A stretch of DNA of 63,761 nucleotides, counting the filler, from Octopus bimaculoides (taxonomy: Eukaryota), in NCBI RefSeq assembly GCF_001194135.2. It is 6 parts of 5 records of this genome, joined end to end, with 100 filler letters (N's around TTAATTAATTAA, not from the genome) between each part and the next. Parts side by side here need not be neighbours in the genome. Positions count along the whole stretch, not along the records: positions 36,150 to 46,103 come from NW_026332907.1; 5 more parts are not named here. One strand, given 5' to 3'. The notes under the pieces are model-generated. The model was not told where the DNA came from. It ran no database searches and saw only the letters and a list, made by a program, of their open reading frames with translations. This document shows positions 35,601-44,480 of the stretch, in pieces (the first letter of the stretch is position 1; each line of letters opens with the position of its first letter). The translations under genes were made by a program, and so were the position numbers.

Positions 35601-37959
35601 GTAGCAAATCAATTATTTTGATTTCAAATTTTTGCACAACTTCAACAAGTTCGAGGGAAAAGATAAGTCGATTATATTGAGCCCAATACTTCACTGGTAC
35701 TTATTTTACCGACCCCAAAAAGATGAAAGGCAAAGTCGACCATGGCGGGTTTTGAGCTCAGAACGTAAAGACTGATGAAATGCTGCTAAGCATTTACCCC
35801 GGCGCACTAATGATTCTGCCTTAGCAAATCAATTATCTTGCCAGAAACACAGATTCTCTTAAGAAAATGAACGCGATATCGTTCAACTGAAATTTGACGC
35901 AAATCAGCAACAAAAATGACCATATCGATAGTGTATTATAACGAACAACCAGAAATGCATGTTACATAGCCACTATTTCAAGGAACTAGCTCACTCACCC
36001 CACTCTCTGTTTCCCCTCTCCCTCTCTCCCTCTCTCCCTCTCCCTCTCTNNNNNNNNNNNNNNNNNNNNNNNNNNNNNNNNNNNNNNNNNNNNTTAATTA
36101 ATTAANNNNNNNNNNNNNNNNNNNNNNNNNNNNNNNNNNNNNNNNNNNNACCAATAGAATAAATACTAGGCTTCCAAAGAATAAGTCCTGGGGTCGATTG
36201 GCTCGACCAAAGGCGGTGCTCCAGCATCGCCGCAGTCCAATGACTGAAGCAAGTAAAAGAGTAAAGAGTAAAGAGAGTGTCTTTGTTATCTTTATTGAAC
36301 TGTTTAAAATTATTGGACGATTATTTTGCGTACACCCTTTTCTTCATAAATTATCAAACAGATATAAATTCATGAAATTTACCCATTTCATATTATATTT
36401 CCATTAGCTCAGTTCTCCCATCAATTTGATAGCAGAGGCATTTCCTGACAAGTTGAACTTAATGCTACAAGACACCGAAAATTATTTTCTCATTATAAAC
36501 TTTCTAATTGTGGAGAGTAAAAATCTAGGACTTGTCTGCTGCTAGAAGACTACATTGGTACTTAAATAGAGCTACAATTTGAGATATATTCCAAAAACCC
36601 TATGCTACCTTTAACCCTGTGTTAATATAACATCTTTATCAATTTCGGCAGTAGATAATACAGCACTATAAAAAAAAAAACAAATAACGCACAACAAATT
36701 GTTTTTAATAAGAAGAACGAGAGTTTATTCAAACTTGGAAATTGGGAAGTGCACATATATGTTAATATTCCTGTAATTCAAATATTATTTGTAAAGCGTA
36801 AATACTATTGTGACAAGAAGCAATATTCTCCAAATTTCCAGATGTAAACTAATCTGATATGGTGAAAATAAGGGGCCACATGCGATGTGAGCGACCAGTA
36901 TGAAGATATCTGCAAACTTTTCAGTTCCTTGTAACTTCCATTTCTTTCCAAAGGTCACTAACAATTGTGTATATCTATAAAAATGAAAATCAGTTTTTTT
37001 TCGATTTTATGTAATACAAATATTGTGCAATTTCTGAGAGCCACAAGTAATGTTATTTCAAAGATATTAGCAATAAAATATATATGTTAATAAAATAAAT
37101 AATTTTGAGGTTGTTTTAATGTTCATTTCAGTTTCAGGGAAATACGTAGAATAATACTAAGTATTATTTAAAGAAAATGCCTAATAGGAATGCATCGGTT
37201 TATTTATTTGCATAAATACTGAATATTGATTATGCAACCATAGCTTTTATATTCATGTATTTTGTGAACAAAATACATGAATATTACAAGTTCATTTCTC
37301 AGAAATTGCACAATAAAATTACAAGTTCATATAGTCTATGTGTATGTGTGGTCGGCTGTGTCTATGTGTGTGTTACTTTTCTGTATATATCCTATTAAAC
37401 TAGTTGCGTTTTCTGGTAGATATTGTGTCAATATCAGTATCAGCGCAATTTTAATTTACTTCTAAAAAATATAATCTTCTACTCTTCTCAATCGTGGCTT
37501 TTCATGAGCATTTTCTTTACGAAACACGTACACTCTCCGTGTTTACATGCATTTAAATTACTTATTAGCTTAACAGAAAATTGTACTATATTGCGCTTTA
37601 CTAGAAAATTCATATTTACAACACTTGTAAACTGTTTACGATTTTAACAAGTTTGCATGATTGACGGAATTGATATCATCAGGTTAAAAAAGTTCAAAAA
37701 CACAATAGGAAATATGTTAAGCATTTTATGGTAATAGCTTTTAATGACTTTACGGCTTACGTACTATATTTAATATTATAAATAAAGCTGAGTCAAGTCA
37801 GTATCATATTTGAGAATACTTAGCATATATAGTATTATATATGCGACTACTAAATAACTACTGGATTACATTATATGTAATGAAACAAGTGGTACCTGCC
37901 ATAGATAAAAAAAGTAAAGACTGAAATATAATACAAAGATGTTGTGACAAAGCAAACAG

Positions 37960-38532: not shown

Positions 38533-38593
<61 letters not shown>

Positions 38594-38696
38594 NNNNNNN
38601 NNNNNNNNNNNNNNNNNNNNNNNNNNNNNNNNNNNNNNNNNNNNNNNNNNNNNNNNNNNNNNNNNNNNNNNNNNNNNNNNNNNNNNNNNNNNNNNN

Positions 38697-38740
<44 letters not shown>

Positions 38741-38968
38741 TGCCTCTGTGTGTGTCCGATATAACAGATGTGTGGTTCATTTACTTGTATGATTTTGTCT
38801 TGCATCTGTACAAGCTTTATGATAGATATGCTTATGAATATGCTCTGAAAGTTAAATAGAGTGTGTGAATATACCGCAGTATGTCTTGTTATTCTGCGCA
38901 TAAGTGTATGCAGAATATTATAGATATTTGTGAGTGTTATCTTGTTACACGGCAAATTGTATATTAAT

Positions 38969-39020
<52 letters not shown>

Positions 39021-39473: not shown

Positions 39474-39479
39474 TTTATT
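39474..39479 (-). terminator. Candidate polyadenylation signal (AATAAA) for the receptor gene
   Basis: First minus-strand AATAAA found downstream, ~225 nt after the stop codon; common by chance in AT-rich DNA. Confidence 0.3.
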
Positions 39480-39519
39480 CATACATGTGTGTGCGTGTTA
39501 GCGTGTGTATATGTATATA

Positions 39520-39557
<38 letters not shown>

Positions 39558-39702: not shown

Positions 39703-40845
39703 CTATAAAGATAATACAACAAAAATCATGTAGATTAACAAAAATATAACAGTGACGAACAAAAAGACGATGTCAAGCTTTTGATATGCATACATATGCT
39801 TCTTAGAGTGAATTGTATTTTTGAAGTTTAACTTCGCATCATAAGGCTGCTCAATAATTCCGATTTTATTTTTTGACCCTGTTTGTTTAAATCTGAATTT
39901 TGGTATTGAATTATTTTTCACTGTAGCCTGGTCGACATACATTCTACACCCAATTATGGAGATAAGTGTAGAAAAGCCGCTGACAAGTGTCAGAATTAAA
40001 AGATATAACAAGTACATTGACATCCCGAGAGACTTCGTACCCAATACTTTGGCCGTTTCTGTCAGATAGACAACATTGGCAAGGAAAATTGTGATTGCAA
40101 CTGAAACCTTCTCTCCCGATTCAGCAGGCAATAAATACACGCCTAAGTTCAGTATTGTCAGCATTATTGGGAATATGAAGTATGTTAATGTTTCACTCAT
40201 AAATTTTCTTTTTGCGAAAATAGTAACACTAGCCGATATGATTTCCTTTTCAGTAACGTTCCCTACAGCAAACTTATATTCCCACTTATCTGCTTCCGCA
40301 TTATGCAAATTGTTAAAAGAAAAGCTTTGCATGGTTTTCTCTATATTCTCCTGATGACCTAAGCAGACGGTAATATTACATTCATGTTCATCTAAAGGAT
40401 ATTTAAGCATGTTAATTGTACAGTGAGTTTGGAAAATTCCATCCATATGTAAAGACACTGATCCGTCATATTTTACAGTGGCTCCTTCTCCTTCATGTTG
40501 AGAAAATTTGCCTGACATATCGTTACATATGGAAACAGTAGGATACCATATGTCATCTACATTTACGCTTATGTAAGTTATATTTTTCATTGTTGTATTC
40601 CACAGCAAGTAGATATCTTTCCATGATAAACCAAGCACAACTTTGCTTGTAAGCAAAGCTTTTTGAATATCTAATTCAATTATTTTAAACATTTCAAGGA
40701 ATACATCTACTTTCACTATGTCTTCATCATTATGGACAGGCCTCTCGCTTTTCGTGTAATTTTGAAGCAACATTGATCGCAGAATGCTTTTCTCAGAAAT
40801 AGCGTTCACATTAACCGCTAGTAATAAGATAGCTATGAATTTCAT
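39703..40845 (-). CDS. Intronless Cys-loop ligand-gated ion channel subunit, atypical nicotinic-acetylcholine-receptor-like; probable cephalopod chemotactile receptor (CR) family member, 380 aa
   Basis: Uninterrupted ORF. Signal peptide MKFIAILLLAVNVNA; nAChR-like motifs ERPV, W-x-D-x-x-L-x-W-N (WKDIYLLWN), IWYPTV; Cys-loop C142-x13-C156 (CTINMLKYPLDEHEC); pre-M1 KRK; M1-M2 LPAESGEKVSVAITIFLA; M3; ~55-aa M3-M4 loop; terminal M4. No loop-C YxCC. Channel fold ~0.97 certain; CR-family assignment ~0.8. Confidence 0.95.
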   Translation of the reverse strand: MKFIAILLLAVNVNAISEKSILRSMLLQNYTKSERPVHNDEDIVKVDVFLEMFKIIELDIQKALLTSKVVLGLSWKDIYLLWNTTMKNITYISVNVDDIWYPTVSICNDMSGKFSQHEGEGATVKYDGSVSLHMDGIFQTHCTINMLKYPLDEHECNITVCLGHQENIEKTMQSFSFNNLHNAEADKWEYKFAVGNVTEKEIISASVTIFAKRKFMSETLTYFIFPIMLTILNLGVYLLPAESGEKVSVAITIFLANVVYLTETAKVLGTKSLGMSMYLLYLLILTLVSGFSTLISIIGCRMYVDQATVKNNSIPKFRFKQTGSKNKIGIIEQPYDAKLNFKNTIHSKKHMYAYQKLDIVFLFVTVIFLLIYMIFVVLSL

Positions 40846-42989
40846 TGTTGTTATATGAAGGTAAACTATTTCTTCCCTTTGTTGGTTTGTTACTTTAAAG
40901 GGCTCAGTAGTTTTCGATTTCTGAATTAACTTGAAACGTTAAATATCCATGTAGAATAAGCATTCCGCTTGACAAAATATAACTGTATATTTTATGCATG
41001 AAAATATGTAAAATATTTGCCTTTGGCAAAAGTGTGTTTCAGAAATGTATAGACAAAAGAAAAGTACGAGCATGCAGACAAGATTTCTCGCTAAGATTGC
41101 ATGAATTCTCTACATTCTGTAGTTGGTAAAATTTTGTGAATATTTTCAGCCAAGTTACAATGAATTAGTTTCTTTCATCTACCGTCGCTCTCAAATGAAG
41201 TTACCTAAACTCATTTGACAGTCATAATTTTCTGTTCTTTGACGCTCTACCCCCTCTCTGTCTCTCCCTATCTCCCTCTCTCTCTCATCTCTTACGTTCT
41301 CATTTTCCGTCTTTGATTATAGCTCCATTCTTTTTAAGCCATGTATTTCTGGATCTTTTTTTAAAATTACAGCATTGTGCTAAGTATTTTTTCTAAGTAT
41401 ATTTAAAAGCCGTTTCAACTACTTTGATTTGAAATACTGAATTATTACTTTATTATTACTGAATCATTTAATTAATAAGGAGCAAGTAAGATAATATTAT
41501 AAAACAAATTCCTCTGAGACTACAAGCGACGGGACATTTGAGATTTACATTGTAACGGTTGTAAGTATAAAATCATGCTTCTTACACTGAATATGCACTG
41601 AGTATCGTTATTGTATTCATTACTTGTTTATAGATCAATTGTCTGCATTTACTTTAACGTTCTCTTTTCCTTTTATGCATTTTGTACAAAAGAATATGCA
41701 TAAGTACATAACAGCATTTCAAACCGATCCCTTATAATATTATTTGCCTAGAAAATACTTTTGTCATTTTTGGCTAACGCATTCAACGAGTTAAAACGTT
41801 CTAAATTGGTCCCAGTAATAATAACAATAAGATTGTTAACAATATAAAATTTTATTTCTTTTCTTTTCCGGACAGCCGAGTAGGCAAGTCCAAATATTTG
41901 TTATCTGACATTCTACTGCTCAAAATGTTAAATTTATATATGAAACACACATGTCTATGCACCTAAGCACGCAGAACTATTTGATTTCCGCACAAACAAA
42001 CGACTAAAATCTATAACAAAATCACGAGATAAATCTGCCACAAAAACAATATATCATAGAGTTCCCTAATGATAAAAAGAGAAATAATCTAGATATCTGG
42101 AGCAGAAAAACAACGTTTTTACTGCGGGTTTTCATTAACATATAGAGAGATAGAAGTGTACAAACACACACACACACATAAACATTCAAGCTCATACACA
42201 TACTTACATACTGATATTCTTTTCTTTATTCGTTTATTCTTTTACTTCTTTCAGTCGTTTGACTGCGGCCATGCTGGAACACCGCCTTTTAGTCGAACCA
42301 ATCGACCCTAGGGGTTTGTAAGCCTAGTACGTATTCTATATGTCTCTTTTGCCGAAACTCTAAGTTACGAGGACGTAAACATACCAGGATCGGTTGTCAA
42401 GTGATGGTGGTGGGACAAACACAGACACACAGACATATGTATGTATGTATGTATGTATGTATGTTTTCTAAGGCAATCGTGTCGTCAAAAATATGTACAT
42501 ACATTTTATATTGAAATAAGTAAATGGACACAGGAAAAGAAATAATGGAATTAACTTTATTCTTTAATTTATTCGCTCTGTCGTTTGATATCATCACAAG
42601 TTATAGCACCTATAGATCAGGGTTTGTGCTGTGTGATGGTGAGGTTTGAATTTCTATCATCGTTTAGCTTATTTAAACTTCGTTGTTTCTCGCTTGTAAA
42701 CATTTGTCGCAAATTTTACTTCTATCGAATTGTTGTACTCTAACCATAGTAAAAACCTTTCACTGTTTTTCACTAACTCAGTTTTCTATACTGACAATTT
42801 TCTTCACTCAATTCTATTCTATTAGTTGTTATATAGATCTTCAAAGCAGCTATGGTATTATGAGGATGTCAATTACTCACCCTGTATCTAAAAATGGTCA
42901 CATGGTTGTTGTTACATAAACGTAAATATTGTCAGACATCCATTTATGACTTTCGTGGGCTTTCTGAAAAATAGTGAAAATTGTTGAAA

Positions 42990-43420: not shown

Positions 43421-43923
43421 GAAGTTATTTGATGATAGAGCTCCCTTATTTCCTATAATCATCATCGATAATATTTTGAACCCTTTGAATGAATCACAGT
43501 GTCCTTATTGAGTCTGAATATTCAGAATGTTTTGGTCTCTTTAATAGAGTTGAATAATTCCCGGCAGAGACTTTCAATTCAATCTAAAATTTGTGCACAA
43601 AAAATCTTGCAAAATTAAAAAAGTTAACAATTTTTAAATCACCGACCTCGTTTATTTGACAACAATGACTGCATGTCTATTAATTTCTTGTATTTGCAAT
43701 TTTATCGCCATGGAGATTATTGAACTGATAATTACGGAAGGATACCTAAAGGAAACTGGGATTTTGCAATATTATATTATTCGTTTAGATTTACATGTTT
43801 ACACTTTTACATGTTTACAATTTTATTGCAATTTGAATTATTCTCCATTTCAAACAATGCCGAGGCCCGGGCGCGTTTTCCTCTATTCGAAGCAATGCTG
43901 AAACCCTTGCGAAGTTTTTGTTT

Positions 43924-44480
43924 TCACATCTTCCACATCGGCAAATTCCTTTCGTCACCATTATTGAACTTCGAGAAAAGGTCCTGACTTACTTCTAACT
44001 TTTCATTCAGTTCACGACAGGCATTCAGTCGTGACTGGTTTTGATCTTCCATGAGTAAGTGAAGCACAAATTTTGCTGCAACTCGTTTCATTCGCAATTT
44101 CTCGCTCAAAATTCGTTGGCGGGAGGTCCAGAACACAACAGTCATATCAAAAAATTCGTCAATTATCTGGTGATGGTCCTCCAAGATGAGTTCATGAATT
44201 TTCATGAAGTTTTCATTCCTTTAGGAGTTCCCCAGTCGTCTTCAGCACGTTTGATCTGTAACTGATAAGTGACCGAACTTAAAGCGTGGTAACCACTCGT
44301 AAACATATGTTTTGCTCATGGAAGCGCACTTGTAAGCTGTTTGAAGCATGAAAACTGTTTCCGCTGCCGTTTTCCTCAGCAGGAAACAGAATTTTATGGA
44401 AGCACGTTGTTCCTTCGTTTCAGCCACCCTAAAAATCGACGAACAGGGGAGAAGGATTGCAAACCAACGATGCTCCACAT
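43924..44480 (-). mobile_element. Defective mariner transposase (5' half)
   Basis: EQRASIKFCFLLRKTAAETVFMLQTAY..MSKTYVYEW..RFKFG, then ILSEKLRMKRVAAKFV.HLL..DQ.QSRLNACREL..GDE. Confidence 0.9.

What the first reader, a model, noticed from the sequence alone, without database searches (positions are those of the whole stretch)
40200..40530. Acetylcholine site dismantled; an extra cysteine pair replaces the loop A and loop B aromatics
Seen, against alpha7 nAChR recalled from memory: loop A 'YN' becomes C107-N (IWYPTVSICN); loop B 'FGSW' becomes V-C161-L-G-H with no Trp; the W188-to-preM1 segment is about 7 residues shorter and has no YxCC or second Tyr (GNVTEKEIISAS). Inference: C107 and C161 lie on neighbouring strands and could form a second extracellular disulfide that reshapes the pocket for non-cholinergic ligands. 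An NVT glycosylation sequon (N196) falls in the loop C region.
Basis: partly seen in the sequence, partly recalled or inferred. Interest (0 to 1): 0.7.

Follow-up and report, generated by a model that had tools for sequence, protein, structure and literature searches.

The report
Octopus taste-by-touch receptor gene
This is an intact gene for one of the octopus "taste-by-touch" chemotactile receptors, a published family descended from acetylcholine receptors; its lost acetylcholine site and extra cysteine pair are shared with the already solved receptor CRT1, so the gene is ordinary, though the pair does behave in evolution like a real disulfide.

Summary
The finding lies in an intronless 380-aa ORF (39703-40845, minus strand), 99% identical to an Octopus bimaculoides database fragment. 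Its best solved relative is the octopus chemotactile receptor CRT1 (8EIS, E 9e-50, 32% identity).

All five acetylcholine aromatic-box positions are lost: loop A Tyr to C107, loop B Trp to G163, loop D Trp to V70, and both loop C Tyr plus the vicinal Cys-Cys deleted. This loss is the published hallmark of the family.

The extra pair C107/C161 is not special to this gene. It is invariant in 19/19 octopus paralogs and present in CRT1 (C96/C150). C161 replaces the Gly of "FGSW", not an aromatic.

Evolution supports a disulfide:
- Of about 190 receptor domains, 26 have both Cys, none has only the loop-A Cys, and one short fragment has only the loop-B Cys.
- Both Cys were lost together at least twice independently, each time in lineages carrying a different extra pair (C-x16-C).

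I could not measure the Cys-Cys distance, because no coordinates were available. Squid CRB1 lacks the pair yet is non-cholinergic, so the pair is not what abolished acetylcholine binding. Verdict: known family, modest interest.

The parts
39703..40845 (-). Complete single-exon coding sequence (380 aa plus stop) of an Octopus bimaculoides chemotactile receptor (CR), a nAChR-like pentameric ligand-gated channel subunit
   Evidence: ORF. Best PDB hits are CRT1 8eis_A (E 8.7e-50) and 9e6b_A; squid CRB1 8eiz_A also matches at 1.7e-25. Pfam Neur_chan_LBD 2.1e-29. 99% identical to the O. bimaculoides fragment P0002. Foldseek top hits are 8eis_A and 8eiz_A. dN/dS 0.25 against ortholog L003.
40795..40845 (-). 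Predicted signal peptide (about residues 1-17, MKFIAILLLAVNVNAIS)
   Evidence: Hydrophobic N-terminus upstream of where the mature 8EIS chain starts to align (query residue 18 to chain residue 6). Inferred; no signal-peptide predictor was run.
40201..40794 (-). Extracellular ligand-binding domain (residues 18-215), containing exactly four cysteines
   Evidence: Pfam LBD; AF2 DSSP shows a beta-sandwich; Cys count.
40636..40638 (-). V70, at the position of the loop D Trp of nAChRs and of pocket residue Y58 in CRT1
   Evidence: alpha4 and CRT1 alignments; CRT1 pocket residues from bioRxiv 10.1101/2025.03.03.641191.
40525..40527 (-). C107, at the loop A Tyr position (alpha1 Y93). First half of the accessory Cys pair; equals CRT1 C96
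   Evidence: Codon is TGT here and TGC in the ortholog.
40378..40422 (-). Canonical Cys-loop, C142 to C156 (C-x13-C)
   Evidence: Invariant in all aligned receptors.
40363..40365 (-). C161, five residues after the second Cys-loop Cys, at the Gly of nAChR 'FGSW' (alpha1 G147). Second half of the accessory pair; equals CRT1 C150
40354..40359 (-). G163-H164, at the place of the loop B Trp. H164 aligns with CRT1 L153, described as the 'back wall' of the pocket
   Evidence: alpha4 alignment; CRT1 mapping; L153 role from bioRxiv 10.1101/2025.10.28.685082.
40222..40284 (-). W188 and the shortened loop C region (residues 188-208), with no vicinal Cys-Cys and no Tyr. Contains the N196-V-T sequon at 40252-40260
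39919..40197 (-). Transmembrane helices M1-M3 (residues 217-309)
   Evidence: AF2 DSSP helices 217-237, 244-269 and 277-309; alignment to CRT1 and nAChR TM regions.
39712..39792 (-). M4 helix (residues 352-378)
   Evidence: AF2 DSSP helix 352-378; aligned with the CRT1 C-terminus.

Best explanation
The window holds an intact, selectively maintained, intronless gene for a member of the cephalopod chemotactile receptor (CR) family. CRs are nAChR-derived pentameric cation channels of octopus sucker sensory cells that detect poorly soluble contact chemicals instead of acetylcholine.

Shown: all five aromatic-box positions and the loop C vicinal disulfide are gone, so the orthosteric site cannot bind ACh in the classical cation-pi way.

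Inferred: C107 (end of loop A, strand beta4) and C161 (strand beta7, just before loop B) form a second intrasubunit disulfide. It would staple loop A to loop B on the principal face and form part of the conserved inner or back wall of the pocket. It sits three residues before the position of CRT1 L153, the residue that paper calls the back wall. The CRs with this pair have also lost the WxPD aspartate, which in nAChRs holds loop B by hydrogen bonds (established knowledge, not tested here).

Ligand specificity would be set by the variable residues on loops C, D, E and F. In this paralog those are more polar than in CRT1 (E51, V70, H133, D135, H164 against Y39, Y58, W122, F124, L153).

The disulfide is a scaffold feature inherited from the CR ancestor. 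It is not an adaptation of this gene, and it is not the cause of the loss of ACh binding.
For: Family identity:
- Best PDB hits are CRT1 8eis/9e6b (E 1e-49); squid CRB1 8eiz also matches at 1.7e-25. Foldseek ranks 8eis_A then 8eiz_A first.
- The protein nests in a large octopus clade with 297/300 bootstrap support.
- It is 99% identical to an O. bimaculoides entry.

Live gene: dN/dS is 0.25 overall and 0.18 in the ECD against ortholog L003, with a synonymous TGT/TGC change at C107.

ACh site lost: alignments to alpha4, alpha1 and Torpedo beta.

Disulfide:
- C107 and C161 are invariant in 19/19 paralogs, alongside the Cys-loop pair. CRT1 has C96/C150.
- Across the roughly 190 anchored domains, 26 have both Cys, 0 have loop-A only, 1 (a 138-aa fragment) has loop-B only, and about 162 have neither.
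- The ECD has exactly four Cys in 15 of the 19 pair-bearing sequences tabulated.
- Both Cys were lost together in P0024 (L/G; groups with CRT1 298/300) and in the CRB1 subclade (Y/Y or H/Y; 299/300). P0024 grouped with the CRB1 subclade in 0/300 replicates, with the focal columns removed.
- The DSSP of the model puts C107 right after strand 104-106 and C161 inside strand 153-162.
- The WxPD Asp is present in 0/31 domains with the pair and in 72/165 others.

Pocket residues and the 'back wall'.
Against: - No coordinates were available, so the Sgamma-Sgamma distance was measured neither in the AF2 model (pLDDT only 60.7) nor in 8EIS.
- The co-occurrence counts are phylogenetically non-independent. 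Essentially there is one origin plus two or three loss events.
- CRB1 has two bulky Tyr at the same two positions. This shows the sites tolerate large side chains and need not be tightly apposed.
- None of the papers I could read mentions this disulfide.
- Expression, assembly and ligands of this particular paralog are unknown.
Confidence: 0.72

Rival explanations
1. C107 and C161 are not bonded to each other. They are free thiols, or they take part with nearby His residues (H154, H164) in a metal-binding or redox-sensing site in the pocket.
For: H154 is invariant, and H164 is His in 17 of the 19 paralogs of the large octopus clade (R in P0018, E in P0019). C156-x4-C161-x2-H164 superficially resembles a metal-binding motif. 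Metal-gated pLGICs exist, for example ZAC.
Against: C156 is committed to the universal Cys-loop. In CRT1-type CRs the position aligned with H164 is L, I, V, S or Y (CRT1 L153), so no fixed Cys/His geometry is conserved wherever the pair is. Unpaired Cys in a secreted domain are unusual, and the strict both-or-neither pattern with an even Cys count is the classic signature of a disulfide. Metal sites more often lose single ligands.
Confidence: 0.1
2. The four ECD cysteines are connected differently (for example C107-C142 and C156-C161), so the canonical Cys-loop is rewired in CRs.
For: Sequence alone cannot fix connectivity. C156 and C161 are close in sequence.
Against: The C-x13-C Cys-loop is invariant in every receptor examined, including CRs that lack C107/C161 (P0024, CRB1, P0033, P0039). 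So C142-C156 stands on its own, and C107/C161 come and go as a separate unit.
Confidence: 0.03
3. The ORF is a decaying or non-functional duplicate in a large tandem family, and the unusual residues reflect relaxed constraint.
For: CRs are a rapidly expanding family. The public gene model for this locus is truncated and ends in unrelated residues (P0002). Transposon debris and microsatellites flank the gene.
Against: The 380-codon ORF is uninterrupted, with signal peptide, Cys-loop and M1-M4. dN/dS against an 80%-identical ortholog is 0.25, and 0.18 in the ECD. The 'unusual' residues are the conserved ones of the family.
Confidence: 0.04

Closest known systems
Octopus chemotactile receptor CRT1 (PDB 8EIS; 9E6B/C/D, 9YI4), O. 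bimaculoides
   Same: Same family and fold. Both have about 380 aa, a short loop C without vicinal Cys, a lost aromatic box, the same four ECD cysteines (C96/C131/C145/C150 against C107/C142/C156/C161) and a short intracellular loop.
   Different: Only 32% identical, and in a different CR subclade. The CRT1 ligand-contact residues Y39, Y58, W122, F124, L153, S169, L191 and F192 are E51, V70, H133, D135, H164, L180, I202 and I203 here. The pocket is therefore predicted to be far less hydrophobic and less aromatic, and the ligands probably differ.
Squid chemotactile (bitter) receptor CRB1 (PDB 8EIZ)
   Same: A cephalopod CR: nAChR-like, no loop C vicinal Cys, and described as not gated by ACh.
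   Different: CRB1 has Tyr/Tyr at the two positions instead of Cys/Cys. It carries a different extra pair (C-x16-C around the W188 equivalent) that the window protein lacks.
Nicotinic acetylcholine receptor subunits (alpha7, alpha4, muscle alpha1/beta)
   Same: Pentameric Cys-loop receptor fold, C-x13-C loop, WxP motif, M1-M4, and a cation-channel-type M2 region 'SGEK'.
   Different: Loop A Tyr, loop B Trp, loop C Tyr-x-Cys-Cys and the second loop C Tyr, and loop D Trp are all absent. The WxPD Asp is replaced by Thr, loop C is 6 residues shorter, and the intracellular loop is very short.
Accessory disulfides in other pLGICs (nAChR alpha C192-C193; GlyR/GABA-A/GluCl loop C disulfide; ZAC C289-C394; SsCl apical disulfide)
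   Same: A second disulfide, added to the universal Cys-loop, that tunes binding-site or gating conformation (ZAC and SsCl; the others from established knowledge).
   Different: [quoted passage not shown] None links loop A to strand beta7/loop B. I found no described example of that position in the papers I could search.

Membership tests
Cys-loop (pentameric ligand-gated ion channel) superfamily | Extracellular beta-sandwich domain with a 15-residue Cys-loop (C-x13-C) | tested here: met
   C142-x13-C156; Pfam Neur_chan_LBD E 2.1e-29, above the cut-off; fold match to pLGIC structures with probability 1.00.
Cys-loop (pentameric ligand-gated ion channel) superfamily | Four transmembrane helices M1-M4 | tested here: met
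   AF2 helices 217-237, 244-269, 277-309 and 352-378; aligned to the CRT1 and nAChR TM regions. Pfam Neur_chan_memb scores only 25.1 bits, below its 28.1 cut-off, as expected for the very short intracellular loop.
Cephalopod chemotactile receptors (CRs) | Closest relatives are CRT1/CRB1-type receptors, and the protein nests in the cephalopod-specific clade | tested here: met
   Best PDB sequence hit is CRT1, and squid CRB1 also matches. Foldseek ranks CRT1 then CRB1 first. The NJ tree places it inside the octopus CR clade with 297/300 support. The tree is distance-based and sampling is limited.
Cephalopod chemotactile receptors (CRs) | Loss of the canonical acetylcholine-binding residues | tested here: met
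   Loop A Tyr to C107, loop B Trp to G163, loop D Trp to V70; loop C Tyr residues and Cys-Cys absent. The family trait is stated in eLife 2023;12:e86029 and bioRxiv 2025.03.03.641191.
Cephalopod chemotactile receptors (CRs) | Single-exon gene lying in a tandem cluster | tested here: inconclusive
   The whole protein is one uninterrupted ORF, as are the relatives in L001-L004. The 10-kb piece holds no second CR gene, so clustering cannot be judged. That this is a family feature is from my own recollection of van Giesen et al. 2020, which I could not read.
Cephalopod chemotactile receptors (CRs) | Expressed in sucker sensory epithelium; gated by poorly soluble contact ligands, not by ACh | not testable with these tools
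   Needs RNA-seq or in situ data and electrophysiology.
nAChR alpha-type (agonist-binding) subunit | Vicinal Cys-Cys at the tip of loop C | tested here: not met
   No CC anywhere in the ECD; loop C is shortened by 6 residues.
nAChR alpha-type (agonist-binding) subunit | Aromatic box (TyrA, TrpB, TyrC1, TyrC2) on the principal face | tested here: not met
   C107 and G163 at the loop A and B positions; no aromatic residue in 196-206.

The most novel reading that the evidence does not exclude
The CR family uses two alternative accessory disulfides. One is a loop A-to-beta7 staple (C107-C161 type), ancestral and kept in nearly all octopus CRs, including this gene and CRT1. The other is a C-x16-C bridge flanking the W188 equivalent (loop F to beta9). 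Lineages that have the second bridge lost both cysteines of the first, at least twice independently: P0024 within the CRT1 subclade, and the squid CRB1 subclade, where Tyr or His took their place. P0058 keeps both bridges and may be an intermediate. If so, a 'disulfide swap' frees the loop A and loop B positions to become ligand-contacting residues. That would be a discrete structural switch between pocket types in a rapidly evolving sensory receptor family, and it may not have been described.
Probability: 0.3. Interest if true: 0.45.

Novelty: already known. Interest (0 to 1): 0.27.

Why it matters
For genome annotation, the locus is a bona fide, complete chemotactile receptor gene. The public protein model for it looks mis-spliced: it is truncated after residue 301 and lacks the intracellular loop and M4.

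For receptor biology, the value is modest:
- It pinpoints a conserved, probably covalent loop A-loop B staple in the scaffold of octopus CRs. This can be checked at once in the deposited CRT1 coordinates.
- It shows that this staple is dispensable in the squid CRB1 lineage, where another cysteine pair is present.
- It shows that this paralog's pocket is much more polar than that of CRT1, which makes it a reasonable candidate for a different ligand class.

None of this changes the published picture that CRs are nAChR descendants with a remodelled, non-cholinergic orthosteric site.

Tried and rejected
1. The three primary papers (Allard 2023, Kang 2023, van Giesen 2020) could not be opened by PMC id or DOI. 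I therefore cannot say whether the C96-C150 bond of CRT1 is already described. Full-text searches for chemotactile plus disulfide or disulphide found nothing relevant, and the two CRT1 preprints never use the word.

2. The AF2 model built from the 19-paralog alignment reached only pLDDT 60.7 and comes without coordinates.

3. I looked for a published Y93-G147 distance in muscle nAChR papers. Both residues are treated there as binding-site residues, but no distance is given.

4. The profile search with a 16-sequence CR alignment hit the candidate cap and added only two sequences.

5. The first bootstrap run timed out and the second produced NaN distances. It was repeated with capped distances, and the conclusions did not change.

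6. The Zn/His-Cys site idea was considered and judged unlikely, because in CRT1-type CRs the position aligned with H164 is not His (CRT1 L153).

7. The AATAAA at 39474-39479 (-), 3' of the stop, is not more than chance in this AT-rich DNA.

8. The mariner-like remnant gives only a sub-threshold HTH_48 match.

Full report
**1. What is at the coordinates**

The finding (40200-40530) lies inside one uninterrupted ORF on the minus strand, 39703-40845, encoding 380 residues.
- C107 in IWYPTVSICN (codon 40525-40527)
- the C142-x13-C156 Cys-loop
- C161 in CNITVCLGHQ (40363-40365)
- W188
- an N196-V-T sequon

The extracellular part holds exactly four cysteines. Pfam finds the neurotransmitter-gated channel ligand-binding domain at E 2.1e-29. 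The AF2 model shows a beta-sandwich followed by four helices.

**2. What the protein is**

The best solved relative by sequence is the octopus chemotactile receptor CRT1 (8eis_A, E 8.7e-50; 9e6b_A, 1.3e-49). Ordinary nAChR subunits follow at about 1e-28 to 1e-24, and squid CRB1 scores 1.7e-25. Foldseek on the model ranks 8eis_A first and 8eiz_A second.

The protein is 99% identical, over the part they share, to a 295-aa Octopus bimaculoides database fragment. It has 80-38% identical relatives in O. sinensis, O. vulgaris, O. bimaculoides and unnamed assemblies. In a distance tree it falls in a large octopus clade with 297/300 bootstrap support. It is only 32% identical to CRT1.

Against its 80% ortholog (L003), dN/dS is 0.25 overall and 0.18 in the extracellular domain, and the C107 codon differs synonymously (TGT/TGC). 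This is a live gene, not a pseudogene.

**3. The acetylcholine site**

HMMER alignments to alpha4, alpha1 and Torpedo beta give these equivalences:
- Loop A Tyr aligns with C107.
- 'F-G-S-W' of loop B aligns with V160-C161-L162-G163, so the loop B Trp falls on G163, next to H164.
- The loop D Trp aligns with V70.
- The distance from W188 to the pre-M1 Arg is 25 residues against 31 in alpha4, with the YxCC...Y segment deleted.

All five aromatic-box positions and the vicinal disulfide are therefore gone. This is the published defining property of CRs (eLife 12:e86029, bioRxiv 2025.03.03.641191). One correction to the title of the finding: C161 replaces a glycine, not an aromatic residue.

**4. 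The extra cysteine pair is a family trait**

In the alignment of 19 octopus paralogs, C107 and C161 are invariant, exactly like C142 and C156. Mean column identity there is 57%.

CRT1 has the same pair, C96 and C150. The numbering was verified by matching eight literature residues to the 8EIS chain. So the pair is already present in a solved structure.

**5. Does it behave like a disulfide?**

I searched all 1.84 billion representatives and read the two positions with the WxP and Cys-loop anchors in about 190 receptor domains. The counts were:

| State | Domains |
|---|---|
| Cys at both positions | 26 |
| Cys at the loop A position only | 0 |
| Cys at the loop B position only | 1 (a 138-aa fragment, P0050) |
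| Neither | about 162 |

Further points:
- 15 of the 19 pair-bearing sequences tabulated have exactly four extracellular Cys.
- Within the CR clade, several members lack both cysteines together. These are P0024 from O. bimaculoides (L/G), squid CRB1 (Y/Y), P0033 (Y/Y) and P0039/P0173 (H/Y).
- With the focal columns removed, P0024 groups with CRT1 and P0020 in 298/300 bootstraps. The CRB1 subclade is recovered in 299/300, and the two never join (0/300). So there were at least two independent joint losses.

This both-or-neither pattern is what a disulfide predicts. The caveat is that it rests on one origin and a few loss events.

**6. What I could not do**

The decisive geometric test was not possible. 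The AF2 model is of modest confidence (pLDDT 60.7) and no coordinates are returned, and I have no access to the PDB coordinates. The DSSP string only shows that C107 follows a short strand (104-106) and that C161 lies in strand 153-162.

The primary CR papers could not be opened, and the papers I could read never mention this bond. I therefore cannot tell whether it has been described.

**7. Likely role**

C161 (CRT1 C150) lies three residues before CRT1 L153. The CRT1 authors describe L153 as the conserved back wall of the orthosteric pocket, in a region under purifying selection.

The WxPD aspartate holds loop B by hydrogen bonds in nAChRs (established knowledge). It is absent from all 31 pair-bearing domains and present in 72 of 165 others.

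My best reading is a covalent loop A-to-beta7 staple that fixes the principal-face scaffold of the pocket, with specificity set by variable residues.

The pair is not what abolished ACh binding. CRB1 lacks it and is also described as non-cholinergic.

**8. This paralog's pocket**

The CRT1 contact residues Y39, Y58, W122, F124, L153, S169, L191 and F192 map to E51, V70, H133, D135, H164, L180, I202 and I203. D135 is conserved in most members of the large octopus clade, and H164 is His in 17 of its 19 sequences. The pocket is thus predicted to be much more polar than that of CRT1, consistent with the reported positive selection at these sites.

**9. Seen in passing**

- The relatives without the loop A/B pair all carry another pair, C-x16-C, flanking the W188 equivalent. 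Both Cys are present in six of six sequences, and P0058 has both pairs.
- The public model P0002 leaves the ORF after R301 and ends in residues encoded at 36614-36637. This is probably a mis-splice.
- The flanks contain (TG)n and (TA)n microsatellites, an assembly gap, and a decayed mariner-like element.

**10. Verdict**

The gene and its dismantled ACh site belong to a known, published family, and the cysteine pair is shared with a solved structure. The covariation evidence for a loop A-loop B disulfide, and its apparent exchange for another pair in some lineages, is a small and easily testable addition.

Noticed in passing
Not in the window; proteins P0024, P0033, P0039, P0173, P0058 and PDB 8eiz_A (region aligned to window residues about 178-195): There is a second, alternative accessory cysteine pair (C-x16-C flanking the W188 equivalent), always with both Cys present. 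Five of the six carriers lack the loop A/loop B pair, and P0058 has both. P0024 and the CRB1 subclade are phylogenetically separate (0/300 bootstraps together), which suggests a convergent 'disulfide swap'.
   Followed up: partly
window 39943-39945 (R301) and 36614-36637 (-): The public O. bimaculoides protein model P0002 (295 aa) follows the window ORF to R301, then ends in 18 unrelated residues. The last eight of these (KDVILTQG) are encoded 3.3 kb downstream. The model therefore skips the intracellular loop and M4 that orthologs retain, and is probably a mis-spliced gene prediction.
   Followed up: partly
window residues E51, V70, H133, D135, H164 (40693-40695, 40636-40638, 40447-40449, 40441-40443, 40354-40356): The positions equivalent to the hydrophobic or aromatic ligand contacts of CRT1 (Y39, Y58, W122, F124, L153) are acidic, His or small here. 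D135 is conserved in most members of the large octopus clade, and H164 is His in 17 of 19. This hints at a different, more polar ligand class.
   Followed up: partly
window 38535-38755: A (TG)n microsatellite is split by a run of N (an assembly gap). Perfect (TA)n tracts lie at 38973-39018 and 39508-39557, the latter about 150 nt 3' of the gene's stop codon, and (TATG)7 at 42436-42464.
   Followed up: no
window about 43900-44480 (-): This looks like a decayed mariner/Mos1-type transposase N-terminus, broken by stop codons. The only match is a sub-threshold Pfam HTH_48 hit (E about 2e-4, 21-22 bits against a 24.1 cut-off).
   Followed up: partly
P0050 (138-aa O. bimaculoides fragment, not in the window): This is the only sequence with one cysteine of the pair (Arg at the loop A position in 'WYPDVHIRNS', Cys kept after the Cys-loop). 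It could be a pseudogene fragment, a sequencing error, or a single C-to-R change.
   Followed up: no
L001 1883-4728 (-): A non-LTR retrotransposon (RVT_1 plus Exo_endo_phos_2 ORFs) lies about 5 kb from the CRB1-like gene P0033 in an unnamed assembly (ENA ERZ21867824). P0033's match to squid CRB1 (E 4e-86) suggests a squid- or cuttlefish-type species. The same assembly also encodes a Cys/Cys-type CR (P0028), which tentatively suggests the pair predates the octopus-squid split.
   Followed up: no
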